Of a stretch of DNA of 64,000 nt, positions 3,930-35,300 are shown in pieces. Every line of letters starts with the position of its first letter. Positions within the stretch are counted from its first letter, which is position 1. The translations under genes were made by a program, and so were the position numbers. The DNA lies in NCBI RefSeq assembly GCF_023055435.1, contig NW_025964223.1:18042001-18106000 (forward strand). The letters run 5' to 3'. Source of the stretch: Haliotis rufescens. Taxonomy: Eukaryota. Below the pieces are notes generated by a model. That model searched no databases, was not told where the DNA came from, and was given only the letters and a program-made list of their open reading frames with translations.

Positions 3930-3940
3930 GGGAATTCCCC
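3930..3940. promoter_or_regulatory. NF-kB site upstream of the 4671 IAP fragment
   Basis: Palindromic GGGAATTCCC(C). A likely non-coding first-exon donor (GTGAGT at 4166) and an acceptor (TTTCAG ending 4518) lie downstream. Confidence 0.55.
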
Positions 3941-14950: not shown

Positions 14951-17530
14951 TTTCAAATACCTGAAAGTACCTCAATTTACATCCATATAATCAATGATGG
15001 ATTTTAGCCCGCATATACCGGAAAACCGTCGTTTTGTGTCTAATAAATGATGATTTGATCCTTGAGAGTGACAATGACTTGACAATGATAGCATATTCAT
15101 TAAAATGCCTTAATGTGCCTCATATCATGTATATTAGATGAATGATAGATAGGTCCTTCGAATGTCCCTTAAACTATATAAATATAAAATCACTGATAGA
15201 TTCATTTGTTTCAATGAATGTTCCTGAAATTGTATATATATAGAGAATATACAGTAATCAATGACAGATTCTAAGTTGTGTGTATATAAATATATGTTCA
15301 ACAATGAATTATGATTTCAAATACTGATGTTGCCTCATAGATCTTTGTATATTGTTAGAAGTACAACATTGTTTATATTGTTAGTATATATGGCCAGTAT
15401 ATTTCAAATGACTAATTTATACTTACCAAAATATTGATTCACTGATTTTTCTTATTCGGGGTATCAATTGTCACGTGTATGTGTATCATGAATATTTGTC
15501 ACAAATGTATCATTAGTTACATACGTCACTCACGAACTTCAGCTACAATGCTCTGGAGAACGAAATGTAGATAAGTATTTATATGACTGTATTTTCAGTA
15601 TCATTTGTGAGAAAGAACTATCATTGTCTATTTTACATTGATTTGATGGACAAGTTTGAATGCAGTTTGTATTTTCTTGTTGTGACAGTTTGACAGTGAC
15701 CAAGCATGGAAACAAGTCGAATTGTAAGACTCATTTCTCATTTTGGTCTGATATTATTTCTCATGTTTCTAATGAAACATGCAATGAGTTTAGTAACATC
15801 TTGTCAACAACATCTCCTTTAAATCGTCTTACACAAGTTGAAGACATCTGGGCCCTGTTTCACAAATCTATCTTAGCGCTAATGCTGTCATTACATCCAG
15901 CAATTGGTCATGTCTTTATTCATAATATATTCCTACATAAGCTAATGTCGACAAATGGACAACATTGTTTAGTAATATATTTTATGATGCCAATACTGTC
16001 TTTAAATGTATCATTATAACTATCTGATTATGTATATGTTTAAATATGTTCTATTTGAATTCAAAATATGCATACATGATGTTTTCTAAAGATGTGTGTA
16101 CACATTATCATTTGTACCATTGGTACACAATATTAACTTGGTAACACAAACATACTGTGTAATAACTTTTCCTTTGTCTGGGATTAGAATTGGCTTGCCA
16201 ATGTTTTAGGATTTTTGTCATATCTACTAGTATATCTATTACAACCAGTCACTGGGTATTTGTATTTCAAGCGCAAACTTATCAACACTGTTTTGTTCTA
16301 ACCAGTCTTACAGTCTGTGTATGACATGAAACGATGTGATTGAAGATATTGTTTCAATAACCTATTAATGTTCCCTTTTCAGTTCATTTTTATAAGAAGT
16401 TAATGTGATTTTTCTGAATGCACCAACCTTTGGTCCACTGAGAGATAAAGTGTCATTGATGAACCATATGCTCATACACAGGTGTGGGACACACTATGAA
16501 ACTTAGTATTTAAAGATCCAGACAATGATTAAAATGTATCAGATTCTTTTTCCTTGATAGGATATATACAAATCGGTTATTATGTAAACAAAATAATTCA
16601 CTATCAACGTTTGCCTTTATAGTTCATATACTTCTGGTGGGTACTGATAATACTATATGATCCTTTTATACATATAGATGTTTTATATATACATGGAAAT
16701 GATCGTGTTGTTTGTTGTGTCAAAATAGAGTGTTGTTGTGTCAATTTCTTGCATCTGTCAGGATATATTCCTTGCAGGATATATGGTGTGTATGAAATTG
16801 TACTCACTGAAGGAATATATAATTTCTTCGTTGATTTGTAACACATTGTGATAGCTTCATCTCACAATAAAATATTTGCAGATCAAATATGTGTAATTAT
16901 GTTGTTTTTCTGGTCACGTGTCCTTCATTTAAAACATATTGACCGAATGCACATGTTTCTTTCAAATGTCACTACACACGAACAAAACAAATATGAAAAC
17001 ACATCATCAACAGGGATCAAATTGTTACTTTGAAAAGTAACCGATAAACAAATGTTTGTGGGTATATAAACGAAACCAAGATTCGTACTTGCTCTTTTAT
17101 CCGTAATTTAATCAGAAAGGGTAACGAAATCTTTGAGACGAATATGGGCAGATCTAATGCCCGATTTTGAAATAGGAATATATATGGAGTGAATATTATT
17201 ACATTATATTAATATTTGACCCAATTGGCAAATTACCACATTTACACCATATTCGATTCACCAGACGTTTGTAATTATGTCTACTGAATGAAGATAGATG
17301 ATAGATGATCTATTGATATGAAATAAGTATACAATGAAATCTTAACGCGAATTGCTTGGAACATCCAAATATACGCTTAATTACAACGGTCCGGTATAAT
17401 CAGCATTCGACAAGCAACTGAACTAGTATTATCATATATAATAGGTACATAAAAACTATTACCACATTTCATATAACTTCAAATGTCTACCAAAACATTT
17501 CAAATGCCATGTCCACGGCCCTAGAATACT

Positions 17531-18530
17531 TCGACTCAACGAGGTAATGCTGCTATTTGTGTTGCTGTTTCGACTCAGCGAGGTAGTGCTGCTATTTGTG
17601 TTGCTGTTTCGACTCAGCGAGGAAATGCTGCTATTTATGTTGCTGTTTCGACTCAGTGAGGTAAAGCTACTATTTATGTTGCTGTTTCGACTCAGTGAGG
17701 TAAGGCTACTATTTATGTTGCTGTATCGACTCAGCGAGGTAAAGCTACTATTCATGTTGCTGTTTCGACTCAGCGAGGTAAAGCTGCTATTTGTGTTGCT
17801 GTTTCGACTCAGCGAGGTAAAGCTGCTATTTGTGTTGCTGTATCGACTCAGTGAGGTAAAGCTACTATTTATGTTGCTGTTTCGACTCAGTGAGGTAAAG
17901 CTGCTATTTGTGTTGCTGTATCGACTCAGCGAGGTAAAGCTGCTATTTGTGTTGCTGTTTCGACTCAGTGAGGTAAAGCTACTATTTGTGTTGCTGTTTC
18001 GACTCAGTGAGGTAAAGCTACTATTCATGTTGCTGTTTCGACTCAGCGAGGTAAAGCTTCTATTCATGTTGCTGTTTTGACTCAGTGAGGTAAAGCTGCT
18101 ATTTGTGTTGCTGTTTCGACTCAGCGAGGAAATGCTGCTATTTATGTTGCTGTTTCGACTCAGTGAGGTAAAGCTACTATTTATGTTGCTGTTTCGACTC
18201 AGTGAGGTAAGGCTACTATTTATGTTGCTGTATCGACTCAGCGAGGTAAAGCTACTATTCATGCTGCTGTTTCGACTCAGTGAGGTTAAGCTGCTATTTG
18301 TGTTGCTGTATCGACTCAGCGAGGTACAGCTGCTATTTGTGTTGCTGTATCGACTCAGCGAGGTAAAGCTGCTATTCATGTTGATGTTTTGATTCAGTGA
18401 GGTAATGCTATTATGTGTGTTGCTGTTTCGACTCAGCGAGGTAAAGCTGCTATTTATGTTGCTGTTTTGACTCAGAGTGGTAATGCTATTATTTGTGTTG
18501 CTCTTTCGACTCATCGAGGTAAAGCTGCTA
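17531..18530. repeat. Minisatellite, 39-bp unit, ~25 copies
   Basis: Unit tcgactcagcgaggtaaagctgctatttgtgttgctgtt; accounts for the repetitive ORFs on both strands. Confidence 0.97.
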
Positions 18531-18974
18531 TACATGATAACGTTGTGACACAGTGAGATCACTGTGTAGAAGGAATGGATATATATGTGAGGAGATTTCT
18601 TTGAAAATAATCATGATTAGAAAAGCCACGACACATACATTGCTTTTAATACTTTTAATATCTTACCTTTTAGCAAGAACAAGCACCTTGTTATAAGGTT
18701 GCTTTTATGACAAGGCAGGAGAAACTCTTGAAAATATGTATCACGTCTGTGAAAAAATAACAGATTCAACCTAAACAAAATCCAGTTAAAAATGTAAATA
18801 GAAACATGCATATACAAAATGACGCATATTTTTTAGATATTGGCTATATTTTTTTATATTTTCTTTGTTATAGTGATAAACTAATGTTATAAGGGGCAAT
18901 GAGTCATGATTACCGGACTCCACCTTCTCTACAATTCCTGTAGCGTGTTTGAGTCTTTCATATGTAACTTCAGT

Positions 18975-19124
18975 TATTTATAAACACACGTTGTTCGTGA
19001 TTGGCCCGATGCGGACCTGAAATACATCTGACGTGGAATGATGGCTGTCGCATGCACAACGATATTGATCATTTGACTGCTCTCGCTGCACGCTTCATTT
19101 TACAAAGACCATATCCAAGTGAGT
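18975..19124 (+). promoter_or_regulatory. Probable TATA and non-coding exon 1 of short IAP copy 1
   Basis: TTTTATAAA near 18976. Donor accatatccaa|gtgagttgtttg (19119) is homologous to accatatcc|gtaagttgtttg (25685). Downstream acceptor ttcag ends at 20455. Confidence 0.5.
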
Positions 19125-20478
19125 TGTTTGTCTCCTACCACTTTCTCCGTGGTTGTGATAATGCCACCGATCTAAATAACCAGATTAAATAACGTGAGAT
19201 AAATATTCACCCTCGTAAACTTGTAAATTCGAGTGACTCGAGTAGCGGATACCATATCTAAAAATAGTTTGTCAACATGACTTAATACGGAGGTGTGTTG
19301 TTTATATCCAAGCACATACAGATATAGTCAGAGTCTGCTCAGTTTTCAAAACATGGGCTGTAGGTAGTTGTTTTCAATATCGCGTAGCTGTGACAATCAT
19401 CTGCATAGAAATAGATCATTATAGAAAGAGTTGTCAGCGTGAACGTGTAGAATTAGGAAATAAACCTCCTGTATTTCAAATCAAATATTTTTGTCTTGGT
19501 TACAACATGTACAAGTGCGCAAATCAAAAAGACGCATTTCAGTCAAATTTATCAGTAATCTGAATTTTTAATCGCGTATTAAATGGAGTCACGGGAGAAT
19601 GAATGTTTGCTTGCCCTTGGATTGAAGTGACTGGAAGTGCTCATATGTCGGCGGTGATAATAGCTTTGCCTCTATTCATATAGAGCTGTACACAATAGCC
19701 TGTCGCAACCGGTCCATACAGTCATAAGGAAGTAAATCTAACACAACGACGTTCGTGTTGTGGGCTGGTAACACCCATTAAATCATTTGATGTATGTTGA
19801 AATCGTAACATGTATGCCATATTGATTCATTATAATGACACATGGCCTTACGTTTTGGTAACTGGCATGTTTATCTCTTCAAATGTATATGTTCATGAAT
19901 GATGCAGAAACGAGTGAAAATGTCAAAATTATCAGGTCATAACTTCACGTATTTCCTACTTATTGTCATACCCTGACACCTGGTGTCATCAATGATTTTC
20001 GGTGATCCATTCATATAATGAACATCACTTGTTTGCCTTTACGCCATGTTATAACTTTGTTCATTTTGCCTCATAGCTATAATATCAACAACAACAGTTT
20101 CCCTTGACATGCTAGATACTAGTATCCTTATCGTGGTCTGATATAAAAATAATAATGTTCGGCTCTGCCTGTCAGAGAAAAGGTTATACTGACCTAAGAA
20201 AAAGTCTATCTCTATATCTCTAACACATATAGAATATTAAACTTCGACGCCTTATATTGATACATCCGTCACTTTGTGAATTGGGGCAGTGGGGTAGCCC
20301 GACGTGAGTGTTGGAATATTGCTAAAAGCGACTTAAACCCTTACTCACGTACGTTTTGAATTATATAGTGTCTGTTGAAAAGTATTAAAATGCATCAGTT
20401 CGATGTCTCCTAAATTCTCGTTCTCGCATCTTCACCATGATTATTTGAACTTCAGAGGAAAGACTGGTTTTGACAACA

Positions 20479-23167
20479 ATGAAGCCGAAGCAATTCCTGT
20501 ACTCCTTCAAGTTATGGCATGACATGATTAGAGTGGATGTTATGGACAAGTGCTTGCATGTGAAGTCAGTGTTCCTCATGCCTTTCCCGAACTTCGTGAA
20601 GGATACCAAGACCTTGCATGATTCCAAAGATTCTTTTGAATAATCTAAATATGAGTTTCCATTCTCAAGAATCCATGTCTTTCCGTCTATTTGTCTCAGG
20701 GGAAACTTCGAGGCATTGGTTAGTAGAGGAGGGGAACCTCTCCAGGACATCATGCGGCTTGAGGCTTTAAGGCTGCGATCCTTTAATGGGGTGAATATTG
20801 AAGCGCCAGCCTTAGTCCTTGCTAGAGAAGGGTTGTATGCTACAGGAGATGGTGACGAGACTAGATGTTTCAGCTGCGGCATCAGGCACAGGAACTGGAG
20901 ACGAAGGGACAGGCCTGCCGATGTCCATCTTGAAGATTGTTGTAGGCATAATTCAAGAAATATACGATTTGCCAACAACCCCTTGCCTTCGGGGAATCAG
21001 CCTGTCCGAACTCACCTTGCGCTGCAAGATCATGACGTACACCCAGTCAGGATCTCCAGAAATCCTGTTATCATCCCCGGTAGCAGTAGAGGAAACCGTG
21101 CACACATGCTCCAGCCAACAGGTGATTACAGTACATTCACAGAACGTCTCTCTACATATCGAAACTGGCCACATGGAAGAGATGTTGCTTTGCCAGCCGC
21201 CATTGCCAGAGCTGGTTTCTTCTACGAAGGTAAGACGTTATATAATATCTATATTTTGTGTCTCTCATGTCTTATCTCATGTCTTATGTCATGTCTTGTC
21301 TCATGTCTTGCCTAATGTCTTGTCTCTCGTTTTGTGTCATGTCTTGTGGACCCGTGAAGATCCGGGGTAGAATAGATCTTCAGCAACCCATGCTTGCCGT
21401 GAAAGGCGACTATGCTTGTCGTAAAAGGCGACTAACGGGATCGGGTGATCAGGCTCGCTTACTTGGTTGATGCATGCCATCGATCCCAATTGTGTGGATC
21501 GATGCTCATGATATTAATCACTGGATTGTCTGGTCCAGACTCGATTATTTACAGACCGCCGTCATATAGCTGGAATATTGCTGAGTGCGGCGTTAAACAA
21601 CAAACCAACCAACCAAATCATGTCTTCTGTTATGTCTTGCCTCATGTCTTGTCTCTCGTTTTGTATCATGTCTTGTATCATGTCTCATCTCATGGGTTGT
21701 CTCATGTTTTGTCTCATTATTCGTCACATGGTTTTTCTCATAACAATATCTTGTACCAAATCGCTAAATGTTTAAAAACATTATCAATAACGATGGAATG
21801 CTTACATTGGAACTACAAAAATCATTCCTTTCAAATAATGTCAATGCATTTTTTTTTTTTTTATTTCTTGGAGGTTTCGCTGATACTGTCCGGTGTTTCG
21901 CATGTTTGACTGCCTTGCGAGACTGGGAACCAGGAGACGATCCCTGGATAGAGCACGTAAGATGGAGGCCAAGGTGTGATTACATAGAATTTGTGAGAGG
22001 TCAAAGACACAGACGGGCGGTTGTCACCAGCATGGCCCAGGTATTGTATTATTATTGATTTTTGAAAACATAAGATTCACAATTTGGTTATTCGGCACCT
22101 TTCTCCATAGCATTATGATTAAACAAGTCTTTATGTCACATGCAGAAAACAGTCCTATTACATTTACCGGTTGTATTTTAAACAGGCACGTCGTGGATGC
22201 GGCCGTGATCCTCCATATGGACAAAGGGAAAATTGTAAGTTTCCTTACCTGTACACTGGATGAACGGTACATATGCATGTAAATTCCCCATGCTTAATTA
22301 TTGCAGCATTCTTCATGATAGTCCAAATTAGAATAAACAATAAATTAGTGACTGAGTGAGTTGGATTTTATGCCGCTTTTAACAATGTCCCAAGGTCACG
22401 GCAGATTTAACTAAGGATACGAACAAGAAGTCGTGTTCAAAGTTCCTTATGAATAATCACTGTCATGTTATATTGTATGTTTTGTTAATTATTATCAGTA
22501 ATTACGTGTTGAGTTTGTATCTCTGATTTGGCGCTGCAGATCCTTTGGGACTTTGTCTCGAGATGGGCTACAGCCAGCACGATATCTTGGAGGCTGCACG
22601 TATTATCGAGAGAGGTAGCGAAGTGTTTATTTGTCATTAAAACATGTATGAAGGCGTTGAACTAAGGTTGTTCGGGTTTGGTTCCATGTAAAGAACTGTA
22701 ATTATTTCACAGTTCATTATCATACAAGAAGTGATATATGTATCATGCCGTCAGTCAGACAGGTACGAATTATACACATTCAGTGTAACAGCATTACTGG
22801 CTGAGAACGTTGAAACTCACAATGACATGCACTGATGTCAGAGACCGAGAGATAACGTCATGTACCTTTTGGCAACCAATCCGAAACTTAACTTTGAATA
22901 ACGAGACTTCGTTGTCATCTTTCAGATAGAGCTGTACTTTCGCTTGAACTGCTTCTCGACAAGTTGATGGTACTAGCAGATGGCACCTCGGTAGATTACA
23001 GCTCACAAGCGCGTGGGGGGAATTGTATTGGTTGTGGGATTCAGCCAATTGCAATAAGGTTTATTCCGTGTGACCACCGTGTATTCTGCAACAGATGCGC
23101 TGAAGACTTCAGTAGGTGCCCCCTCAGAGAGTGTGGACGAGCTATTCAGGGCGTCGAATGGATGTAG
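20479..23167 (+). pseudogene. Short IAP copy 1 (BIR-BIR-UBA-RING) with premature TAA at 20641; exons 20479-21229, 21874-22040, 22186-22234, 22540-22614, 22926-23167
   Basis: Same exon structure as copy 2, with TAT->TAA at codon 55. Reinitiation at ATG 20752 (MRLEALRL) would keep all domains, so it may still function. AATAAA at 23216. Confidence 0.75.
21349..21616 (+). mobile_element. Deu/Nin-domain SINE in intron, inserted in a (TCATGTCTTG)-type simple repeat
   Basis: cttgtcgtaaaaggcgactaacgggatcggg...cactggattgtctggtccagactcgattatttacagaccgcc core and (AACC)n tail. Confidence 0.85.
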
Positions 23168-23424
23168 AACATAAGCCGGCACACTACCAGCTTGACGAAA
23201 ATACGCACATTTCATAATAAATGCATGTTCACTCTTCCTTAGTTGTTGTTTTGGATATCGAATTCTAAGACTGTTTGACTCAGGTAGAAAAAATATTTTC
23301 TTAATGATACTATCTCAGAAAGAAAATATGAAATGTATACAAAACAGACAATATTAACGCGAATTTCAATCTATCCAAGACTTTTGTCCTGGAGATATGT
23401 TTAAATCAATCCCTTTACTGTTGC

Positions 23425-23572
23425 CCCCGTGAAGATCCGGGTTACAATTGGTCTTCAGCAACCCATGCGTGTCGTAAAACTAACGGGACCGGGTTAGACT
23501 CGCTGATTCGGTTGATGCACGTAATGGTATCCCAATTGCGTAGATCGATGCCCATGATGTCATTCACTGGAT
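23425..23572 (+). mobile_element. Truncated Deu/Nin-domain SINE (duplicate at ~29418-29565)
   Basis: cccgtgaagatccggg..ttcagcaacccatg..cactggatt similarity to the 21349 element. Confidence 0.75.
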
Positions 23573-24217
23573 TTTATATGGATATGTCAGGCAATTAGAG
23601 CTGTAAATATGTTTCTTAAAAAAATTCGATATCTGTATATAAATATTTTCTTCAACGAATGGCATTCCACTTTGCCGGGTAGTTCACGTTACGATATTTA
23701 CTTAACTTTCAAGCAAGATCTTTCTTCAATCAGAAATTTATTTATCAGTACTTGCAACGGAAAGCTTCAAAAAACATTTAATTAATTATCCACTTGGTGT
23801 ATTCGACCTATTTGTAAATGAAAGAAGAAAATTGTTCATTGAAATATCGGAAAAAAATTGTCCATTATGTTATATAGAGATAGAAAATGAAATCCATTTT
23901 GTGTTTGTCTATTTATTATGCATGTATCTGATACTGATTCGTGAGCAAAATTATATATTCACATTAATACAAGCAATTAACAAAGATAAATGAAATTCCC
24001 AACACTATAATAATAAAGTAACCAAGGATTCCACTTCATTCATTCGCATGAATACCAACGCATGTCATTTCAAATGCATCACACTACATATTTGAATCTA
24101 TGGTGGAAATGGATCAAAATAAATAAAAGGAAAACTAGCATTTGTCATTATAAAAAAACAAGATGCCCATGTATATGTATATGCAATATTATTAAAATTA
24201 ATATTCATATTGGTGTC

Positions 24218-24370
24218 GGGGCGGTCGGGTAGCCTAGTGGTTAAAGCGTTCGCTTGTCACGCCGAAGACCTGAGTTCGATTCCCGACATCGGTACAATGT
24301 GTGAAGCCCCGCCGGGATATTGCTGGAATATTGCTAAAAGCGGAGTAAAACCAGATTCAGTCAGTCAGTC
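24218..24370 (+). mobile_element. Short tRNA-derived SINE (duplicate at ~30214-30366)
   Basis: ggtagcctagtggttaaagcg A box, gttcgattccc B box, gctggaatattgctaaaagcgg tail. Confidence 0.85.
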
Positions 24371-25423
24371 ATACTGGTGTCAGGAAGACAATGTAGGTGC
24401 GGGACGTTTTTGGATAAGACAATTCACAGTCTGTATATACAACAATACCAAATAGCTTAACGTAATAGAAGTATACAGAACACCTTTATAACTATAACGT
24501 TTCATAAAACAAGAAACACGCACACGTTGCTCATTCGAATTCAGTACGTACATTTGAGAGAAACTGCATCCTTCCCGGAGAAAGGAATCATGTAAATACT
24601 TAGTGTTTATTATTCTCATTTTGTTATTCTATGTTCGATTGCGTATGAAATGAAAATGTACACTCAACATTGTCAAGAAAGAAAGTGTTTATCATATTGT
24701 TTAATTTGATGATAAGTAATCGAAAGATTACAGCAATGTTCGGTTCAGCAGCATACATCGTATCGTTAATGTTAAAAAAAGATGGCTGAAAATTTATATA
24801 ATTACCATCGTTTTTGCTACAGCATCAAATACTGTCCACATTACAACTATTCTCTATGCCTCAGGGACAACCACACAACGTATATATGTGTCCAGTGTCT
24901 GCCTGTATGCCACGCTTCTCCCGTACAGGTTACACACAACCAAATGTTTTTTCCATAGACTTCTATAGTAACGTTATATTTTTTTTTAAAATAACTAAGC
25001 ATTCAATAGCTATTACCTGTACGTGTGTGCACAGTTTGGCCTTAGAGCAGCAATAAAAATATAAAAAAAACTAGCTTAGTCAGCTCCTTTTCCGAGTACC
25101 GGAAGCTAAACACAACACCCCCAGTTTCGCACCAAATGTCACCTACTTGAAAATAGCTGTGGTCACATTCAGCATAAGTCATCATGTTGAAAAAGACAGT
25201 ACTAATATAGAAAAACATGGTCAGTTTTACTAACTGGATGGATGTACATTTGAAAGACATAAAAATCTTACAGAATATCCTCCAATCACAGCCTGCAGAT
25301 ATCTCTCGACCTGCACTGAAGGCTCCCTACGAAAACCGCACTGTCCAAACTGGTACTGATTTGGTGTAGTAGAACCTGTAGCGCGGTTCACAGGTCACGT
25401 TGACCTGGGCGACGACCGATTAC

Positions 25424-25690
25424 TGAGTCAGAAATAGCACTTGGGATATCCCAGTCAGGAGTAAAACTAGAATCGACGTGTCCCTGCCTTATAAATAGAC
25501 TTGCATTCTTTGTGTGCGAGCTGCGGGTTAGATTATTTATGTTGCATACACGACTTGCAAAGGGACGCAACCGAACTAACCGGCAGAATTACTGGTCTGA
25601 ATGACGCACGGCTGTAACATGACTTCCTTTTCTGATCGGAATGATTGAGTCACAGCCAGCCGACGCCATGTTACCACCATATCCGTAAGT
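25424..25690 (+). promoter_or_regulatory. Duplicated promoter and exon 1 of the long IAP, now upstream of short IAP copy 2
   Basis: AP-1 TGAGTCA at 25424 and 25646, kB-like GGGATATCCC at 25443, TATAAATA at 25490, donor cc|gtaagt at 25685, acceptor cccag ending 26161. Confidence 0.65.
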
Positions 25691-26467
25691 TGTTTGAGTC
25701 CACACTTGATCCTAAAACATCTATATGGCGTTGTTGTTACATGCAGACCTTGCTGATCTGTGTCACTATTGATCTCTTACAGTATTAATGAATATCTGTT
25801 TACCGTAACTCACAGTGAATGTAAAAACCTGGCTATCTAGCGTCACAACATTATGGTCGTTAGTTGATAATATATTATGCGTATATTGCTAATGTATAAC
25901 TCCATATTCTATACATGTAGGTGTCACCAAATGTAGAGCTACCATGTACAGTGAATGTATCATAGCGTCTTCCTCCAAGCGTCTCTCATCTTACATGACA
26001 TCAGCACATTATAACCAGCCACAGTATCAATGATCATCTGTGTAACATACCGATATAACAAGTGTCATATTTAATAAGAAGTACTTGTGGTCTAACAGTG
26101 CTTGAATGCTTATTCTTTGTGACGCAATGTTAAACATGTTAACAACTTCCTGTATCCCCAGGCAGGCACATCAAGTTGTGTAAAGACCCGGCAGCTCTCT
26201 TCGATAACTACAGGGTTACAAAGTACACTGTGTCAAGTGCAATGGCTCCACAACCAGCCGAGGAAGATATCTGAAAGAAGCGATTCAACGTATATACATT
26301 TGGAATATTGCTAAAAGCGACTTAAACCCTTACTCACATACGTTTTGAATTATATAGTGTCTGTTGAAAAGTATTAAAATGCATCAGTTCGATGTCTCCT
26401 AAATTCTCATTCTCGCATCTTCACCATGATTATTTGAACTTCAGAGGAAAGACTGGTTTTGACAACA

Positions 26468-29160
26468 ATGAAGCCGAAGCAATTCCTGTACTCCATCAAG
26501 TTATGGCATGGCATGATTAGAGTGGATGTTATGGACAAGTGCTTGCATGTGAAGTCAGTGTTCCTCATGCCTTTCCCGAACTCCGTGAAGGATACCAAGA
26601 CCTTGCATGATTCCAAAGATTCTTTTGAATATTCTAAATATGAGTTTCCATTCTCAAGAATCCATGTCTTTCCGTCTATTTGTCTCAGGGGAAACTTCGA
26701 GGCATTGGTTAGTAGAGGAGGGGAACCTCTCCAGGACAGCATGCGGCTTGAGGCTTTAAGGCTGCGATCCTTTAATGGGGTGAATATTGAAGCGCCAGCC
26801 TTAGTCCTTGCTAGAGAAGGGTTGTATGCTACAGGAGATGGGGACGAGACTAGATGTTTCAGCTGCGGCATCAGGCACAGGAACTGGAGACGAAGGGACA
26901 GGCCTGCCGATGTCCATCTTGAAGATTGTTGTAGGCATAATTCAAGAAATATACGATTTGCCAACAACCCCTTGCCTTCGGGGAATCAGCCTGTCCGAAC
27001 TCACCTTGCGCTGCAAGATCATGACGTACACCCAGTCAGGAACTCCAGAGATCCTGTTATCATCCCCGGTAGCAGTAGAGGAAACCGTGCACACATGCTC
27101 CAGCCAACAGGTGATTACAGTACATTCACAGAACGTCTCTCTACATATCGAAACTGGCCACATGGAAGAGATGTTGCTTTGCTAGCCGCCATTGCCAGAG
27201 CTGGTTTCTTCTACGAAGGTAAGACGTAAATATATAATATCTATATTTTGTGTCTCTCATGTCTTATCTCATGTCTTATGTCATGTCTTGTCTCATGTCT
27301 TGCCTAATGTCTTGTCTCTCGTTTTGTGTCATGTCTTGTGGACCCGTGAAGATCCGGGGTAGAATAGATCTTCAGCAACCCATGCTTGCTGTGAAAGGCG
27401 ACTATGCTTGTCGTAAAAGGCGACTAACGGGATCGGGTGATCAGGCTCGCTTACTTGGTTGATGCATGCCATCGATCCCAATTGTGTGGATCGATGCTCA
27501 TGATATTAATCACTGGATTGTCTGGTCCAGACTCGATTATTTACAGACCGCCGTCATATAGCTGGAATATTGCTGAGTGCGGCGTTAAACAACAAACCAA
27601 CCAACCAAATCATGTCTTGTGTTATGTCTTGCCTCATGTCTTGTCTCTCGTTTTGTATCATGTCTTGTATCATGTCTCATCTCATGGGTTGTCTCATGTT
27701 TTGTCTCATTATTCGTCACATGGTTTTTCTCATAACAATATCTTGTACCAAATCGCTAAATGTTTAAAAACATTATCAATAACGATGGAATGCTTACATT
27801 GGAACTACAAAAATCATTCCTTTCAAATAATGTCAATGCATTTTATTTTTTTTTATTTCTTGGAGGTTACGCTGATACTGTCCGGTGTTTCGCATGTTTG
27901 ACTGCCTTGCGAGACTGGGAACCAGGAGACGATCCCTGGATAGAGCACGTAAGATGGAGGCCAAGGTGTGATTACATAGAATTTGTGAGAGGTCAAAGAC
28001 ACAGACGGGCGGTTGTCACCAGCATGGCCCAGGTATTGTATTATTATTGATTTTTGAAAACATAAGATTTCACAATTTGGTTATTCGGCACCTCTCTCCA
28101 TATCATCATGATTAAACAAGTCTTTATGTCACATGCAGAAAACAGTCCTATTACATTTACCGGTTGTATTTTGAACAGGCACATCGTGGATGCGGCCATG
28201 ATCCTCCATATGGACAAAGGGAAAATGGTAAGTTTCCTTACCTGTACACTGGATGAACGGTACATATGCATGTAAATTCCCCATGCTTAATTATTGCAGC
28301 ATTCTTCATGATAGTCCAAATTAGAATAAACAATGAATTAGTGACTGAGTGAGTTGGATTTTATGCCGCTTTTAACAATGTCCCAAGGTCACGGCAGATT
28401 TAACTAAGGATACGAACAAGAAGTCGTGTTCAAAGTTCCTTATGAATTATCACTGTCATGTTATATTGTATGTTTTGTTAATTATTATCAGTAATTACGT
28501 GTTGAGTTTTTATCTCTGATTTGGCGCTGCAGATCCTTTGGGGCTTTGTCTCGAGATGGGCTACAGCCAGCACGATATCTTGGAGGCTGCACGTATTATC
28601 GAGAGAGGTAGCGAAGTGTTTATTTGTCATTAAAACATGTATGAAGGCGTTGAACTAAGGTTGTTCGGGTTTGGTTCCATGTAAAGAACTGTAATTATTT
28701 CACAGTTCATTATCATACAAGAAGTGATATATGTATCATGCCGTCAGTCAGACAGGTACGAATTATACACATTCAGTGTAACAGCATTACTGGCTGAGAA
28801 CGTTGAAACTCACAATGACATGCACTGATGTCAGAGACCGAGAGATAACGTCATGTACCTTTTGGCAACCAATCCGAAACTTAACTTTGAATAACGAGAC
28901 TTCGTTGTCATCTTTCAGATAGAGCTGTACTTTCGCTTGAACTGCTTCTCGACAAGTTGATGGTACTAGCAGATGGCACCTCGGTAGATTACAGCTCACA
29001 AGCGCGTGGGGGGAATTGTATTGGTTGTGGGATTCAGCCAATTGCAATAAGGTTTATTCCGTGTGACCACCGTGTATTCTGCAACAGATGCGCTGAAGAC
29101 TTCAGTAGGTGCCCCCTCAGAGAGTGTGGACGAGCTATTCAGGGCGTCGAATGGATGTAG
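26468..29160 (+). CDS. Short IAP copy 2 (BIR-BIR-UBA-RING), ~427 aa; exons 26468-27218, 27866-28032, 28179-28227, 28533-28607, 28919-29160
   Basis: Atypical BIR1, canonical BIR2 (CFACLTALRDWEPGDDPWIEHVRWRPRC), UBA-like CLEMGYS and variant RING CIGC..PCDHRVFCNRC..CPLREC. Phases consistent, CDS 1284 nt. The acceptor before exon 2 is GAG. Confidence 0.88.
27341..27608 (+). mobile_element. Deu/Nin-domain SINE (duplicate of 21349-21616)
   Basis: Near-identical to the copy in duplicon 1. Confidence 0.85.
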
Positions 29161-31437
29161 AACATAAGCCGGCACACTACCAGCTTGACGAAAATACGCA
29201 CATTTCATAATAAATGCATGTTCACTCTTCCTTAGTTGTTGTTTTGGATATCGAATTCTAAGACTGTTTGACTCAGGTAGAAAAAATATTTTCTTAATGA
29301 TACTATCTCAGAAAGAAAATATGAAATGTATACAAAACAGACAATATTAACGCGAATTTCAATCTATCCAAGACTTTTGTCCTGGAGATATGTTTAAATC
29401 AATCCCTTTACTGTTGCCCCCGTGAAGATCCGGGTTACAATTGGTCTTCAGCAACCCATGCGTGTCGTAAAACTAACGGGACCGGGTTAGACTCGCTGAT
29501 TCGGTTGATGCACGTAATGGTATCCCAATTGCGTAGATCGATGCCCATGATGTCATTCACTGGATTTTATATGGATATGTCAGGCAATTAGAGCTGTAAA
29601 TATGTTTCTTAAAAAAATTCGATATCGGTATATAAATATTTTCTTCAACGAATGGCATTCCACTTTGCCGGGTAGTTCACGTTACGATATTTACTTAACT
29701 TTCAAGCAAGATCTTTCTTCAATCAGAAATTTATTTATCAGTACTTGCAACGGAAAGCTTCAAAAAACATTTAATTAATTATCCACTTGGTGTATTCGAC
29801 CTATTTGTAAATGAAAGAAGAAAATTGTTCATTGAAATATCGGAAAAAAATTGTCCATTATGTTATATAGAGATAGAAAATGAAATCCATTTTGTGTTTG
29901 TCTATTTATTATGCATGTATCTGATACTGATTCGTGAGCAAAATTATATATTCACATTAATACAAGCAATTAACAAAGATAAATGAAATTCCCAACACTA
30001 TAATAATAAAGTAACCAAGGATTCCACTTCATTCATTCGCATGAATACCAACGCATGTCATTTCAAATGCATCACACTACATATTTGAATCTATGGTGGA
30101 AATGGATCAAAATAAATAAAAGGAAAACTAGCATTTGTCATTATAAAAAAACAAGATGCCCATGTATATGTATATGCAATTATAGTATTAAAATTAATAT
30201 TCATATTGGTGTCGGGGCGGTCGGGTAGCCTAGTGGTTAAAGCGTTCGCTTGTCACGCCGAAGACCTGAGTTCGATTCCCGACATCGGTACAATGTGTGA
30301 AGCCCCGCCGGGATATTGCTGGAATATTGCTAAAAGCGGAGTAAAACCAGATTCAGTCAGTCAGTCATACTGGTGTCAGGAAGACAATGTAGGTGCGGGA
30401 CGTTTTTGGATAAGAAAATTCACAGTCTGTATATACAACAATACCAAATAGCTTAACGTAATAGAAGTATACAGAACACCTTTATAACTATAACGTTTCA
30501 TAAAACAAGAAACACGCACACGTTGCTCATTCGAATTCAGTACGTACATTTGAGAGAAACTGCATCCTTCCCGGAGAAAGGAATCATGTAAATACTTAGT
30601 GTTTATTATTCTCATTTTGTTATTCTATATTCGATTGCGTATGAAATGAAAATGTACACTCAACATTGTCAAGAAAGAAAGTGTTTATCATATTGTTTAA
30701 TTTGATGATAATTAATCGAAAAATTACAGCAATGTTCGGTTCAGCAGCATACATCGTATCGTTAATGTTAAAAAAAGAGAGCTGAAAATTTATATAATTA
30801 CCATCGTTTTTGCTACAGCATCAAATACTGTCCACATTAAAACTATTCTCTATGCCTCAGGGACAAAGGCCCGATATAACAACCACACAACGTATATATG
30901 TGTCCAGTGTCTGCCTGTATGCCACGATTCTCCCGTACAGGTTACACACAACCAAATGTTTTTCCATAGACTTCTATAGTAACGTTATATTTTTTTTTAA
31001 AATAACTAAGCATTCAACAGCTATTACCTGTACGTGTGTGCACAGTTTGGCCTTAGAGCAGCAATAAAAATATAAAAAAAAGACTAGCTTAGTCAGCTCC
31101 TTTTCCGAGTACCGGAAGCTAAACACAACACCCCCAGTTTCGCACCAAATGTCACCTACTTGAAAATAGCTGTGGTCACATTCAGCATAAGTCATCATGT
31201 TGAAAAAGACAGTACTAAATATAGAAAAACATGGCCAGTTTTACTAACTGGATGGATGTACATTTGAAAGACATAAAAATCTTACAGAATATCCTCCAAT
31301 CACAGCCTGCAGATATCTCTCGATCTGCACTGAAGGCTCCCTACGAAAACCGCACTCTCCAAACTGGTACTGATTTGGTGTAGTAGAACCTGTAGCGCGG
31401 TTCACAGGTCACGTTGACCTGGGCGACGACCGATTAC

Positions 31438-31704
31438 TGAGTCAGAAATAGCACTTGGGAAATACCAGTCAGGAGTAAAACTAGAATTGACGTGTCCCTG
31501 CCTTATAAATAGACTTGCATTCTTTGTGTGCGAGCTGCGGGTTAGATTATTTATGTTGCATACACGACTTGCAAAGGGACGCAACCGAACTAACCGGCAG
31601 AATTACTAGTCTGAATGACGCACGGCTGTAACATGACTTCCTTTTCTGATCGGAATGATTGAGTCACAGCCAGCCGACGCCATGTTACCACCATATCCGT
31701 AAGT
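31438..31704 (+). promoter_or_regulatory. Promoter and exon 1 of long IAP 32355-37607
   Basis: TGAGTCA at 31438, kB-like GGGAAATACC at 31457, TATAAATA at 31504, donor cc|gtaagt at 31699, acceptor cccag ending 32173. Confidence 0.65.
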
Positions 31705-32354
31705 TGTTTAAGTCCACACTTGATCCTAAAACATCTATATGGCGTTGTTGTTACATGCAGACCTTGCTGATCTGTGTCACTATTGATCTCTTACAGTATT
31801 AATGAATATCTGTTTACCGTAACTCACAGTGAATGTAAAAACCTGGCTATCTAGCGTCACAACATTATGGTCGTTAGTTGATAATATATTATGCGTATAT
31901 TGCTAATGTATAACTCCATATTCGATACATGTAGGTGTCACCAAATGTAGAGCTACCATGTACAGTGAATGTATTAGCGTCTTCCTCCAAGCGTCTCTCA
32001 TCTTACATGACATCAGCACATTATAACCAACCACAGTATCAATGATCATCTGTGTAACATACCCATATAACAAGTGTCATATTTAATAAGAAGTACTTGT
32101 GGTCTAACAGTGCTTGAATGCTTTTTCTTTGTGACGCAATGTGAAACATGTTAACAACTTCCTGTATCCCCAGGCAGGCACATCAAGTTGTGTAAAGACC
32201 CGGCAGCTCTCTTCGATAACTACAGGGTTACAAAGTACACTGTGTCAAGTGTAAAGGCTCCACAACCAGCCTAGGAAGATATCTGAAAGAAGCGATTCAA
32301 CGTATCTACATTTTATTGCTGTTGGAAACAGTATCTCGGTACGAGGCATATTTC

Positions 32355-35300
32355 ATGATACGGTCTGATAACTACCGCATTGTATTGACGAGTCGAGATA
32401 TCATACATGAAGCAGCGAGGATGGGTGGTGTGAAAATGATATTGATTCTATGGCTCCCTCCAATTGCATGTAGATATAGGACGGAAATATCAAGCGATGT
32501 TGTTCCCCGACCAACATTTAGTCATCAATTGATCGATACAGATGTCCTACATTCTCTGCTGATCAACCACAAATCCCCTGCTGATATACTGAGTCCGCCC
32601 TTGAATGACATGACCACAGATTCAACATTTGTAAATGTGTCTGAAGCAGGAGGATATATTTACCCCACTCTGAAAGATCTCTGGTCTGTTGTGACTCTTA
32701 CACAATGTGACCTGGCTAGTAAATGCAACCTGTCTCAGTCAAAATCAGGATCTTTTCAGGACTGCAGTGTTGTCGATGCAAATAATCCATTGTTACAACG
32801 TAGCAATACAGTAGGTGAAATGGAATCATGTGTCAGCACGTCTCATGTTGCCATGATGTATGTACATAAAATGTGTATATTGCTGGTGTCAGAGGAAGTC
32901 TGGCAAAAAGCCAGTGCACTTGTAGGTAGCTTTATCGTTCTAGATGTATGCAGCAGAAATAGAAATGGCGGTGACCATATCAATGACAAAACAACTCATA
33001 CATCATTTATTGAGAGCAATATTTTCAAGCTGGTCTGTTCATATACGCGCCCAGTGTTTAGTTGTGTGTTAAACATGGACTGGAACACAATACAACGTCA
33101 TATATTCAGGACTTGGCACTTGCGAGAATTGAATCTAGGACTATCTGACTTTGTAAATCTTGGAGAAACTCATTATGGCACTCATGTTCTCCAATGGATA
33201 TTGGAATGTAGTCAAAACACACAAACATTGAACACACAGGAATATGAATATGGTTTGAACGTCCATGTGTCTGAAATACCAGCTGATGCATGTGAAGTTC
33301 AACCTCGTGGAGATTTGCATCATCTGATACCTACACCTTCGCACATTACAAACGTATCACATATGATGCAAATTAGTGAAGATAATATTTTGCAAAAACA
33401 GATTACTGGCGAAAGCATATCATACAATGATGATATATGTAATGATGATGATACAGAGAAGCATAATAGGCGTCTGTCTACAGCAGATAGGAGGGAACAC
33501 AAACTTGTTTTACATACGGTGGATCAACTGAGTTCCTTGCATATTTATAGTGAGAATAGTCATGATTTGTCTGTAACACTGGAAGAGGACTTACCTTCCA
33601 TTTTTGACAAAAGAGAGGCGTTTAACCTTTTTCAAAAAATGACTGACAAAAGATCCCAGTATACTTGCCCATCATTTCAGCAGAAATCAGAGGAAGAGTT
33701 GAAACACATTGATAAAGATGCATTGTACGGAGATGGATTTACAAGATATATAAACACATGGCAAGAAGTAACAGTTGCACCCTTCTATTCCCTACGACAA
33801 TACTTCAGAAAATTGGAAACCGGGGAGGATTTCCTTCAAGATGAAAAGATGATATATGAAGCATTGCGACTGGGATCATTCTGTGGTATTAACATAAATG
33901 CATTTTGCATCCATCTGGCTGCAGCGGGGTTCTACGCCACAGGAGACGGGGATGAAACCAGATGCTTTAGTTGCGGCATCAGGCACAGGGGCTGGCAACA
34001 GAAGGACAATCCGTTCTTCCTCCATAGACAGATCGCTCCCTCATGTGCCCATATCACTGGAGCTGACGGGAGGAATGTCCCTATCAACCCAAACTCTGAG
34101 TCACATCCATCTTCGTGTTCAGTCCAATCGGCTGAAGCTCCCCATGTTGCTGGAGGTGACGGAGGGTTTGCATTTGGTGCTAACACCGACGAGGTCATGA
34201 ATGGCCCGTCACAAATATCAGAAAGATACGAAACCATGTCAACAGTCGGTCAGGTAAGCTGTGATGGTGGGAGTAAGGGAGCATCATCATCACCAGTCTC
34301 CCTCAGCCATCCCGACAGGGTGGATGCAGATGCAGATGCAGGACACACAAGACAGTATCGCGCAGCATGCATCCTGAGGTTCGATGATGCCGTTTATCCA
34401 CACTACAGCGACAATAAGGTCCGGATGACATCTTTCCAGATGTGGCCTGAACATCATTGCATGAAGCCCGAAGAGCTTGTCCCGGTCGGTTTCTTTTATG
34501 CAGGCAAGTAAAACTTTTATTATGTGTCCTAGATGTTGTGCAAACGTACAGGTTCTACTACACCAAATCAGAACCAGTTAGGACAGTGCCTTCAGTGCAG
34601 ATCGAGAGATGAGGCTGTGATTGGAGGATATTCTGTAATATTTTTATGTCTTTTAAATGTAAATCCATGTTTTTCTATATTTAGTGCCTTTCATGTAGGT
34701 GATATTTGGTGCGAAACTGGGGGTGGTGTGTTTATAATTAGCTTCTTGTACTCGGAAAAGGAGCTGGCTAAGCTAGTAATTTTTTATGTTTTTATTGCTG
34801 CTCTAAGGCCAAACTGTGCACACACGTACAGGTAATAGCCGTTGAATGCTTAGTTATTTTTGCAAAAAATATAACGTTTCTATAGAAGTCTATGGGAAAA
34901 CATTTGGTTGTGTGTAACCTACAGACTTCAAATAATGGATCATATAGCTATACGAGTGGGACGTTAAAACAAATAACCAAATAAAGGTCGTATTCTGTCA
35001 AATGTGTACATACCTCTATTTCTTACATGATATTGGAAAAAGTGATAGATAGGGACGGTACAGGTTGTGTTGCAGGAAATAACAAAGGTGGAATAGGTGT
35101 TGATTGGTTGGTGTGACATAAACATTAATAACGAATGACACCTGAACAGGTTACGCCGACTGTGTTCGCTGTTTTGTCTGCGGTGTTGGTCTGAAGACGT
35201 GGGAAGAGGGGGATGACCCCTGGGTGGAGCACGTGCGCTGGAGGTCATCTTGTGCATACGTGAAGGCCATCAAGGGGGATGAGTTTATTGCACAGACACT

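What the first reader, a model, noticed from the sequence alone, without database searches (positions are those of the whole stretch)
25380..29160. Promoter capture by tandem duplication creates a chimeric IAP transcription unit
Seen: the duplicon starts inside intron 1 of the short IAP (so excludes its promoter near 19.0 kb) and ends inside exon 2 of the long IAP, just before its ORF. Short copy 2 therefore lacks its native promoter and lies behind a copy of the long IAP's AP-1/kB/TATA promoter and exon 1, with acceptors at 26161 and 26444. The copy with the native promoter carries the premature stop, while the rewired copy is intact. The kB-like site also differs between promoter copies (GGGATATCCC vs GGGAAATACC). 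Inference: a regulatory swap caught in progress.
Basis: partly seen in the sequence, partly recalled or inferred. Interest (0 to 1): 0.78.

Follow-up and report, generated by a model that had tools for sequence, protein, structure and literature searches.

The report
Abalone IAP gene borrows neighbour's promoter
In red abalone a young 6-kb tandem duplication placed a full copy of a small apoptosis-inhibitor gene behind a copy of its neighbour's promoter and first exon, and RNA assemblies show the fused transcript is made; it is a clear example of a known way of making new genes.

Summary
Window 20311-26301 and 26300-32313 are a head-to-tail duplication (98.6% identical) in a Haliotis rufescens IAP cluster.

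- **Content of each unit:** the whole coding part of a short BIR-BIR-RING IAP, plus the promoter, exon 1, intron 1 and first 139 nt of exon 2 of the downstream long IAP.
- **Not a mis-assembly:** contigs cross the junction in 3 of 3 red-abalone runs laid, one DNA and two RNA. The DNA run's contig depths fit two copies.
- **Fused transcript:** both RNA runs hold contigs that join exon 1 (ending at 25684) to 26162. The contigs then run unbroken through the junction into the short IAP's coding exon.
- **State of the copies:** the downstream copy (RefSeq XP_046370898.2, 427 aa) is intact. The upstream copy has TAA at codon 55 and is modelled from Met92.

Not shown:
- the native promoter near 19.0 kb
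- use of the 26445 acceptor
- any function of the kB-like site
- expression of the upstream copy
- any selective value

This is the chimeric-gene-by-partial-tandem-duplication mechanism known from Drosophila, so a new member of a known kind. The scan noted a similar case elsewhere in this genome (s1-812744).

The parts
20311..26301 (+). Duplicon copy 1: the short IAP from the tail of its presumed intron 1 to its 3' end, the intergenic DNA, then the long-IAP promoter, exon 1, intron 1 and first 139 nt of exon 2
26300..32313 (+). Duplicon copy 2, 98.6% identical to copy 1
26300..26301 (+). Duplication junction with TT microhomology: long-IAP exon 2 sequence on the left, short-IAP intron-1 tail on the right. 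The full junction stretch occurs once in the genome.
   Evidence: Bridged by X1 record 4, X15 record 19 and X17 record 27.
25424..25497 (+). Promoter copy upstream of short IAP copy 2: TGAGTCA 25424-30, kB-like GGGATATCCC 25443-52, TATAAATA 25490-97. These are consensus matches only.
   Evidence: The 25380-25700 stretch occurs exactly twice in the genome.
25592..25684 (+). Untranslated exon 1 of the chimeric unit, the part seen in RNA contigs. The donor GTAAGT follows 25684 and the true start lies further upstream.
   Evidence: first 78 letters of X15 record 19 and first 93 of X17 record 26, placed by bin-depth arithmetic
26162..27218 (+). Exon 2 of the chimeric unit. The 5' UTR runs 26162-26467, made of long-IAP exon 2 sequence, the junction and the exonised former intron tail. 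The CDS starts at ATG 26468 and covers the N-terminal region, BIR1 and the first half of BIR2.
   Evidence: records 19, 26, 27
26445..26445 (+). Candidate ancestral exon-2 start (acceptor AG at 26443-26444). Its use was not seen in the pieces listed.
27866..28032 (+). Exon 3 (second half of BIR2)
   Evidence: RNA contigs X15 record 22 and X17 record 30
28179..28227 (+). Exon 4
28533..28607 (+). Exon 5, skipped in RefSeq isoform X2 of copy 1
28919..29218 (+). Exon 6: RING, stop TAG at 29158-29160, short 3' UTR with AATAAA at 29210-29215
   Evidence: X17 record 32 reaches 29218
20456..23167 (+). Short IAP copy 1 (exons 20456-21229, 21874-22040, 22186-22234, 22540-22614, 22926-23167). RefSeq models it from Met92 (ATG 20752) as P0007 and P0008.
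20641..20643 (+). TAA at codon 55 of copy 1 (TAT in copy 2; Tyr in the H. cracherodii orthologue)
18901..19118 (+). Candidate native promoter and exon 1 of short IAP copy 1 (TGAGTCA at 18901, donor GTGAGT after 19118). It lies outside the duplicon. Inferred, with no RNA evidence.
31438..31698 (+). Second promoter copy and exon 1, still upstream of the long IAP. The kB-like site reads GGGAAATACC at 31457-31466.
32174..34511 (+). Long IAP exon 2, with its ORF from ATG 32355. It holds a BIR domain and a long N-terminal extension.

Best explanation
A recent partial tandem duplication of 5,990 bp lies in the red abalone IAP cluster. It spans from just upstream of the first coding exon of a short BIR-BIR-RING IAP to 140 nt into exon 2 of the next gene, a long IAP. 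In the head-to-tail product, the first copy of the long IAP's promoter, untranslated exon 1, intron 1 and start of exon 2 sits directly upstream of the second, promoterless copy of the short IAP.

Transcription starts at that promoter copy, upstream of 25592. Exon 1 is spliced from 25684 to 26162, and the exon then runs across the junction. It turns 144 nt of former intron into 5' UTR and continues into the complete short-IAP reading frame (ATG 26468, 427 aa).

Both parental arrangements survive at the flanks. One is short copy 1 behind whatever drives it natively. The other is the long IAP behind the second promoter copy.

Shown: the duplication, the junction in independent data, the spliced junction-crossing RNA, the intact ORF of copy 2 and the stop in copy 1. 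Inferred: the position of the start site, that the promoter copy (rather than something further upstream) drives the transcript, that the mRNA is translated, and that expression differs from copy 1.
For: **Duplication and breakpoints.**

**The junction is unique.** The full junction stretch is found once in the 1.33-Gb assembly. The long-IAP promoter is found exactly twice and the native upstream region once.

**The junction is real.**
- X1 (DNA) record 4 is laid whole on 26264-26732 with 1 other letter, with at least 31 letters on each side of the junction.
- Junction-bridging contigs occur in 3 of 3 organism-A runs laid.
- The mean depths of X1's six listed unique-sequence contigs (records 3-8) track the share of their 31-mers common to both copies (r = 0.96). 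They imply a steady single-copy depth of 15.0-16.8.

**Chimeric RNA, X15.**
- Letters 79-1137 of record 19 (1137 nt) lie on 26162-27220 with 2 other letters.
- Its first 78 letters are placed at 25607-25684, because the two bins there read 5.14 and 9.54.
- Those figures equal 34 x 29.8/197 and (44 x 29.8 + 158 x 3.6)/197.

**Chimeric RNA, X17.**
- Letters 94-225 of record 26 lie on 26162-26293 with 0 other letters.
- That range holds three letters diagnostic of this promoter copy.
- The bins read 3.80 and 3.42, which places the first 93 letters at 25592-25684.
- Record 27 covers 26264-27216 (the arithmetic is mine).

**The runs behave as RNA.** Six of 30 bins, intronic or intergenic, are empty in each RNA run, against 0 of 30 in the DNA runs.

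**Gene models.** RefSeq protein XP_046370898.2/899.2/900.2 (P0001, 427 aa) is 100% identical to copy 2's first coding exon. P0007 and P0008 fit copy 1 from Met92. BIR x2 and RING are found by Pfam.
Against: - All runs laid are Logan contigs. They give no start site, strand, expression level or absence. They also pop variants, so copy-specific expression cannot be read.
- The 25684>26162 joint row was not printed (993 joint rows were cut). It is deduced from contig offsets and bin depths.
- Exon 1 is identical in both promoter copies over 25595-25695. It is therefore assigned to the upstream copy by position and by the diagnostic letters of the adjoining exon.
- Run identities are coded. X1 could share a source with the assembly, although it differs from it at several places.
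- The observed 5' UTR of at least 399 nt holds 8 upstream ATGs. One of them opens a 42-codon uORF that overlaps the main ATG, so translation may be poor.
- X17's junction contig carries 8 other letters, at least 3 of them copy-1-like. It is either a different haplotype or a merged path.
Confidence: 0.85

Rival explanations
1. False duplication: two haplotypes of one heterozygous locus were assembled head to tail, so there is only one short IAP and no chimeric unit.
For: The copies differ by only about 1%, which I recall is in the range of allelic divergence for a heterozygous marine mollusc. Several 'diagnostic' letters are not fixed: 26495 and 27183 read copy-1-like in all 4 runs laid, and 28227 and 28543 do so in X1.
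Against: The junction sequence exists in contigs of 3 of 3 organism-A runs laid, from three studies (P1, P6, P7), including spliced RNA. X1's contig depths fit two copies. At 26293/26294 the contigs of X1 and X17 end or begin, as expected if both continuations exist (the junction and the long IAP).
Confidence: 0.03
2. The duplication is real, but the junction-crossing RNA is read-through or pre-mRNA noise. In this reading copy 2 is driven by an element inside the duplicon (20311-20455 / 26301-26444) that both copies share, so nothing has been rewired.
For: Contigs cannot show starts. Intron 2 is well represented in both RNA runs, so unspliced RNA is present. The sequence at 26350-26360 contains a TATA-like run.
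Against: The RNA is spliced from 25684 to 26162, so it is processed and starts at or above exon 1. RNA depth is 0 in the unique intergenic bins downstream of the short IAP (29581-29777, 29975-30171, 30369-30565, 30763-30950) and in 25838-26034, so there is no read-through from copy 1. In X15 one contig at depth 29.8 carries exon 1, the junction and the CDS, and no other contig lies on 26429-26822.
Confidence: 0.07
3. The chimeric unit exists and is transcribed, but it is a neutral, possibly polymorphic structural variant and not a swap in progress. Copy 1 still works from Met92, and both copies drift.
For: There are 12 nonsynonymous changes (including the stop and one split codon) against 2 synonymous between the copies. 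Coding divergence (14 of 1284 nt) is no lower than non-coding divergence (39 of about 4700 nt). The 9-to-3 excess of derived changes in copy 1 is not significant (P = 0.15). RefSeq models copy 1 as coding, with both BIRs and the RING intact. The chimeric 5' UTR holds eight upstream ATGs.
Against: The stop removes part of an N-terminal region of about 91 aa that is conserved in paralogues of three other abalone sources. In X15 the only contig on the first coding exon is copy-2-like at 7 of 9 diagnostic places and reads Tyr, not stop.
Confidence: 0.45

Closest known systems
Chimeric genes and regulatory shuffling created by partial tandem duplications in Drosophila (Rogers, Shao & Thornton 2017, PMC5460883; abstract read)
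   Same: The duplication spans the 3' part of one gene and the 5' part of its neighbour. The junction fuses the neighbour's promoter and 5' end to the other gene's body, and both parental genes survive at the flanks. An expression change is expected from shuffled regulatory elements and not from dosage.
   Different: Here the borrowed part is entirely untranslated and the recipient keeps its complete CDS, so the protein is unchanged and only the promoter and 5' UTR are swapped. It lies in a mollusc immune/stress gene family. The older copy carries a stop codon.
Tandem expansion of mollusc IAP genes (Witkop et al. 2022, PMC8917759, passages read; MBE 2026, PMC13159474, passages read)
   Same: A BIR/RING IAP cluster growing by local tandem duplication, with lineage-specific young copies.
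   Different: Those surveys count whole genes and domain architectures. 'Promoter' occurs 0 times in both texts and 'chimeric' 0 and 1 times. The 2026 paper states that dispersed duplicates are more likely than tandem ones to change regulatory context. This locus is a tandem case that does change it.
RefSeq gene models of Haliotis rufescens (XP_046370898.2/899.2/900.2; XP_046370890.2, XP_048239992.1, XP_048239993.1)
   Same: Both copies are already annotated as separate genes. Copy 2 is full length and copy 1 starts at the internal Met.
   Different: The names alone say nothing about the duplication, the junction or the borrowed first exon. I could not see the mRNA records.

Membership tests
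Chimeric gene formed by partial tandem duplication | Two head-to-tail copies of one segment with a single novel junction | tested here: met
   The full junction stretch is found once in the genome.
Chimeric gene formed by partial tandem duplication | The segment begins inside gene A and ends inside neighbouring gene B on the same strand | tested here: met
   The right end lies inside long-IAP exon 2, whose start at 26162 is seen in RNA. The left end lies 145 nt upstream of short-IAP coding exon 2. That this is intron 1, and not a promoter-proximal region, is inferred.
Chimeric gene formed by partial tandem duplication | The junction exists in independent DNA and is not an assembly artefact | tested here: met
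   X1 record 4 bridges 26300. The depth model gives r = 0.96. The independence of X1 from the assembly sample is not known.
Chimeric gene formed by partial tandem duplication | A transcript crosses the junction and joins exons of B to exons of A | tested here: met
   X15 record 19 and X17 records 26 and 27. These are contigs, not reads.
Chimeric gene formed by partial tandem duplication | Changed expression relative to the parental copy | not testable with these tools
   Contigs give no levels. Read laying allowed one call and the raw-read RNA runs offered were miRNA libraries.
IAP (BIR-containing, RING E3) family | At least one BIR domain above Pfam's threshold | tested here: met
   PF00653: 105.4 bits with 2 stretches in P0001, 104.1 bits in P0007, and 64 bits in the long IAP exon-2 ORF. 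The cut-off is 22.9.
IAP (BIR-containing, RING E3) family | C-terminal RING finger | tested here: met
   PF13920: 31.9 and 32.4 bits against a cut-off of 27.
IAP (BIR-containing, RING E3) family | Caspase binding or anti-apoptotic activity | not testable with these tools
   No assay was possible.
NF-kB / AP-1 responsive promoter | Consensus sites upstream of a TATA box | tested here: inconclusive
   The sites are present. GGGRNWYYCC gives 8 matches in the window against 2.26 expected, and 1 of 100 shuffles reaches 8. A match is not a function. The consensus strings are recalled.
False (haplotypic) duplication in an assembly | The junction is absent from data outside the assembly | tested here: not met
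   The junction is present in 3 of 3 organism-A runs laid.

The most novel reading that the evidence does not exclude
Partial tandem duplications that hand a neighbour's stress- or immune-type promoter to a complete coding copy may be a recurrent way in which abalone diversify the regulation, and not the proteins, of expanded defence families. At this locus the rewired copy would be replacing the original: copy 1 has lost its conserved N-terminus while copy 2 is the form seen in RNA. The two promoter copies would already be diverging at a kB-like site (a perfect palindromic consensus in the copy driving the short IAP, one mismatch in the copy driving the long IAP). A second, independent case was noted elsewhere in this genome (s1-812744; not tested here).
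Probability: 0.2. Interest if true: 0.6.

Novelty: new member of a known kind. Interest (0 to 1): 0.42.

Why it matters
Surveys of the large mollusc IAP families count genes and domains. How the new copies acquire different regulation is largely unaddressed. This locus shows one concrete route with sequence-level resolution:
- the breakpoints are known to 2 nt
- both parental arrangements are preserved
- a spliced fusion transcript is seen in two RNA data sets
- the older copy carries a stop codon

The event is young: the copies differ by about 1%, and only one orthologue is annotated in black abalone. It could therefore be followed in populations and sister species. It also warns annotators that about 1%-divergent tandem copies in this assembly can be real. 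The mechanism itself is well known, so the value is as a clean example, not a new principle.

Tried and rejected
- **Paralogy of the two promoters.** blastn with word size 7 on 25200-26300 against the window found only the duplicate and an inverted repeat fragment. A local alignment of 18850-19200 against 25380-25720 scored 17, against 10.1 +/- 1.4 in 200 shuffles (largest 18), and covered only the donor flank. The promoters are therefore not alignable. Only the exon-1 donor flank is shared.
- **Other genomic copies or an unduplicated allele in the assembly.** None was found.
- **The black abalone locus.** The only evidence is that its 90% protein cluster lists a single accession.
- **Organism B (X14) as outgroup.** Its contig stops matching exactly at 26300 and runs on for 301 unlike letters, as a native flank would. 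No B piece is listed on 25382-26299, and its depths do not follow the two-copy model (r = -0.18). This suggests, but does not show, that B lacks the junction, because the piece list was cut (192,746 pieces not shown).
- **Polarising the kB-like difference.** This was not possible because no outgroup covers it.
- **Copy 1 expression.** It cannot be read from contigs. In X15 no contig carries the stop letter. In X17, 5 of the 8 other letters of record 27 were not printed.
- **Long IAP model.** The protein search returned only one Logan protein and no RefSeq model, so the long IAP's annotated start could not be checked against RefSeq.
- **Literature.** Four searches found no paper on this locus or on abalone IAP duplication. 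For the 6 papers I saw listings only. Supplements were not opened and might list abalone IAPs.
- **Joined model.** All coding comparisons were made exon by exon.
Full report
**What is there.** The window is G000:C445:18042001-18106000 of a 1.33-Gb assembly. Protein names returned for its products identify it as Haliotis rufescens, red abalone. It holds a cluster of IAP genes on the + strand. tblastn with P0001 finds BIR or RING matches at 4.7, 9.5-13.3, 20.5-23.2, 26.5-29.2, 33.6-37.5 kb and beyond.

Within the cluster, 20311-26301 and 26300-32313 are a perfect-register tandem duplication. They are 98.64% identical over 6017 columns, with 53 mismatches and 9 gap openings, or 62 difference events. 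The repeat finder saw the same pairs at spacings of 5989-6014. The window has no N.

**Breakpoints.** Reading side by side gives the junction. It is '...ACATTT' from long-IAP exon 2 followed by 'GGAATATTGC...' from upstream of the short IAP's first coding exon. Two T's (26300-26301) are shared by both parents, so this is a 2-nt microhomology and not recombination between long repeats.

The first 40 nt or so to the right of the junction are a fragment of a dispersed element, with 21 other genomic places at 85-97% identity. The right-hand parent sequence at 32313 is unique. The full junction stretch (26100-26500) occurs once in the assembly. The long-IAP promoter stretch (25380-25700) occurs exactly twice, and the region around 19.0 kb once.

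**Genes.** The first coding exon of copy 2 (ATG 26468 to 27218) is 100% identical to RefSeq 'putative inhibitor of apoptosis' XP_046370898.2/899.2/900.2 (P0001, 427 aa). Exon-by-exon mapping and splice-site inspection give these exons, with stop at 29158-29160:

| Exon | Copy 2 coordinates |
|---|---|
| 2 (CDS part) | 26468-27218 |
| 3 | 27866-28032 |
| 4 | 28179-28227 |
| 5 | 28533-28607 |
| 6 | 28919-29160 |

. AATAAA lies at 29210-29215. Pfam finds two BIR stretches and a RING.

Copy 1 has the same exons 5989-5993 nt upstream, but reads TAA at 20641-20643 (codon 55) where copy 2 reads TAT. RefSeq models copy 1 from the next Met (ATG 20752) as P0007 (336 aa) and P0008 (311 aa, lacking exon 5).

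The 91 residues lost are not junk. They are present in the black abalone orthologue P0006. They are also recognisably conserved in paralogues from H. cracherodii, H. asinina and an unnamed Logan source.

The long IAP's exon 2 starts at 32174. Its first in-frame ATG is at 32355, where the 94%-identical Logan protein P0009 also begins.

**Is the duplication real?** I laid contigs of four runs on 25050-30950.

- In the DNA run X1 (organism A, study P1), record 4 is laid whole on 26264-26732 with one other letter. That puts 37 letters to the left and 432 to the right of the junction.
- Record 3 ends at 26293 and record 4 starts at 26264. This is the 30-letter overlap expected at a branch caused by the A/C difference at 26294/32306. 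Both continuations therefore exist in that animal.
- As a second check, I compared the mean word depth of X1's six listed unique-sequence contigs (records 3-8) with the share of their 31-mers present in both copies of the reference. The correlation is r = 0.96, and the implied single-copy depth is a steady 15.0-16.8. One collapsed copy would give flat depths. The tool warns that contig depth is no copy number, so I treat this as consistency only.
- Junction-bridging contigs also occur in both RNA runs, so 3 of 3 organism-A runs laid hold the junction.

**Is there a chimeric transcript?** X15 and X17 are labelled 'RNA?' as a guess, but they behave as RNA. Their contig sets are of transcriptome size (68 and 78 million letters). 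Six of 30 bins, all intronic or intergenic, are empty, against 0 of 30 in the DNA runs. Their contigs skip introns.

*X15.*
- Record 19 is 1137 nt at depth 29.8. Its letters 79-1137 lie on 26162-27220 with only two other letters (26495 and 27183).
- It therefore starts exactly at the predicted acceptor and carries this promoter copy's letters at 26240, 26243, 26260 and 26294.
- It crosses the junction and continues through the whole first coding exon.
- The joint table was cut (993 rows not shown), so I located the contig's first 78 letters from the depth table.
- Bins 25444-25640 and 25641-25837 read 5.14 and 9.54. These equal 34 x 29.8/197 and (44 x 29.8 + 158 x 3.6)/197, where the second term is record 18.
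- A 78-letter piece with 34 letters in the first bin and 44 in the second is 25607-25684. It ends at the GTAAGT donor.

*X17.*
- Letters 94-225 of record 26 (225 nt, depth 15.3) lie on 26162-26293 with no other letter.
- The bins read 3.80 and 3.42, equal to 49 and 44 x 15.3/197. This places the first 93 letters at 25592-25684.
- Record 27 then covers 26264-27216 across the junction.

Two RNA data sets from two studies thus show exon 1 > 26162 > junction > short-IAP CDS. The 144 nt of former intron (26301-26444) are part of the 5' UTR in this isoform.

I saw no listed piece using the 26445 acceptor. RefSeq's three transcripts for one protein may include it, but I could not see the mRNA records.

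Read-through from copy 1 is unlikely. RNA depth is 0 in the unique intergenic bins after the short IAP and in 25838-26034.

**Limits of that evidence.**
- Contigs show presence only. They give no start site, strand or level.
- Exon 1 is identical in the two promoter copies between 25595 and 25695. Its assignment rests on position and on the diagnostic letters of the adjoining exon.
- The observed 5' UTR pieces (25592-25684 and 26162-26467) each hold four ATGs. The one at 26392 opens a 42-codon frame running past the main ATG, so translation efficiency is an open question.

**Swap in progress?** Between the copies, whole codons differ at 13 places: 11 nonsynonymous (including the stop) and 2 synonymous. 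A split codon at the end of exon 4 adds one more (22234 T against 28227 G, Tyr against Asp).

Coding divergence (14 of 1284 nt) is not below non-coding divergence (39 of about 4700 nt). Neither copy therefore shows purifying selection since the event.

Against the black abalone orthologue, copy 1 carries 9 derived residues and copy 2 carries 3. The binomial P is 0.15. Two of the nine are doubtful, because organism B reads the copy-1 letter at 26583 and 26739 and the paralogues have Ile at position 91.

Copy 2's derived I10 and L239 are private to the reference. All four runs read the other letter at 26495 and 27183.

In X15 the only contig on the first coding exon is copy-2-like at 7 of 9 diagnostic places and reads Tyr at codon 55. 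Popped variants mean this does not show that copy 1 is silent. The asymmetry is real but the trajectory is not established.

**Promoter motifs.** TGAGTCA, GGGATATCCC and TATAAATA lie at the stated places. The second copy reads GGGAAATACC, from differences at 25447 and 25450. GGGRNWYYCC, a consensus that I recall, gives 8 matches in the window against 2.26 expected, and 1 of 100 shuffles reaches 8. Palindromes count twice. No outgroup covers the site, so which form is ancestral is unknown. Function is untested.

**Native promoter.** Nothing I could run shows RNA from 19.0 kb. The candidate exon 1 ends at 19118 with CATATCCAA|GTGAGTTGTT, which resembles the long IAP's CATATCC|GTAAGTTGTT. There are 3 matches in the window against 0 expected. 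The local alignment scores 17 against 10.1 +/- 1.4, and the largest of 200 shuffles is 18. This hints at an old shared origin of the first exons, but otherwise the two upstream regions do not align.

**Age and relatives.** The 90% protein cluster holds two red abalone genes but one black abalone accession. Organism B, a close relative at about 98.4% identity, has a contig that stops matching exactly at 26300 and continues for 301 unlike letters, as a native flank would. No listed B piece lies on 25382-26299, and its depths do not fit the two-copy model. This is consistent with a duplication younger than those splits but does not prove it.

**Comparison with what is known.** The architecture is the textbook product of a partial tandem duplication spanning two neighbouring genes, as analysed in Drosophila yakuba (PMC5460883, abstract read). 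There, chimeric structures and shuffled regulatory elements, and not dosage, change expression.

Mollusc IAP expansions by tandem duplication are well described (PMC8917759 and PMC13159474, passages read). Those texts do not treat promoters ('promoter' occurs 0 times in each). The latter expects regulatory change mainly from dispersed duplicates.

Four literature searches found nothing on this locus. I did not test it.

**Verdict.** The duplication is real and the chimeric transcript is real. The promoter-capture reading is well supported. Adaptive or 'in progress' claims remain open. This is a new member of a known kind.

Noticed in passing
window 27219-27865 (intron 2 of short IAP copy 2): Both RNA runs hold contigs running from exon 2 into this intron and from the intron into exon 3. 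In X15 these are 27191-27367 at depth 25.9 and 27581-27893 at depth 20.3, against 29.8 for the exon contig. In X17 the depths are 11.1 and 9.65 against 26.5. Other introns show depth of about 3-4 or none. Retention would end the frame after ...FFYEGKT, leaving BIR1 plus half of BIR2. The Logan protein P0003 of a paralogue looks like the same kind of product.
   Followed up: partly
window 28544-30178 (and 22551-24185): Only 1 of the 62 differences between the copies falls in this 1634-bp stretch, against 16.8 expected (Poisson P about 9e-7). It covers the RING exon, the 3' UTR and about 1 kb of intergenic DNA. It looks like gene conversion or later homogenisation.
   Followed up: partly
window 26495, 27183, 28227, 28543: Letters that distinguish the two reference copies are not fixed. 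All 4 runs read the copy-1 letter at 26495 and 27183. X1 also does so at 28227 and 28543 on contigs that are otherwise copy-2-like. Diagnostic SNPs taken from the reference alone would mislead copy-specific expression counts.
   Followed up: partly
window 17413-18648: A 39-bp minisatellite of about 25-30 units at 83-95% identity lies directly upstream of the candidate native promoter of short IAP copy 1. Both strands give long repeat-made open frames.
   Followed up: no
window 27217-27610, 29384-29580, 30172-30368; also 26301-26341: These are very high-copy dispersed elements, with summed contig depth up to 10^6-10^7. Their translations give a '...CWNIA(E/K)(C/S)GVK...' motif. The left breakpoint of the duplication lies in a fragment of such an element.
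   Followed up: partly
window 22234 against 28227: The last base of exon 4 is T in copy 1 and G in copy 2 (aaaatT|gtaagt against aaaatG|gtaagt). This changes Asp to Tyr and takes away the G that usually precedes a donor. RefSeq lists an exon-5-skipping isoform (P0008) for copy 1 only.
   Followed up: no
window 25297-26299 in organism B (X14): B's contig 11 stops matching at 25381, the start of the long-IAP promoter. B's depth over 25444-26231 is 2.7-11.3, against about 25 over the short IAP. The long IAP's promoter and first exon may be diverged, rearranged or absent in that relative.
   Followed up: no
window 24927-25152 against 34689-34920; 25238-25380 against 34547-34668: The sequence just upstream of the long-IAP promoter recurs inverted (90% and 80% identity) inside the long IAP, after its exon 2. 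It is probably a transposable element pair.
   Followed up: no
window 3930-3940, 6672-6682, 34072-34081: Further matches to the kB-like consensus lie upstream of, or inside, other IAP genes of the cluster. The surrounding sequence at 3.9 and 6.7 kb showed no obvious shared promoter architecture.
   Followed up: partly
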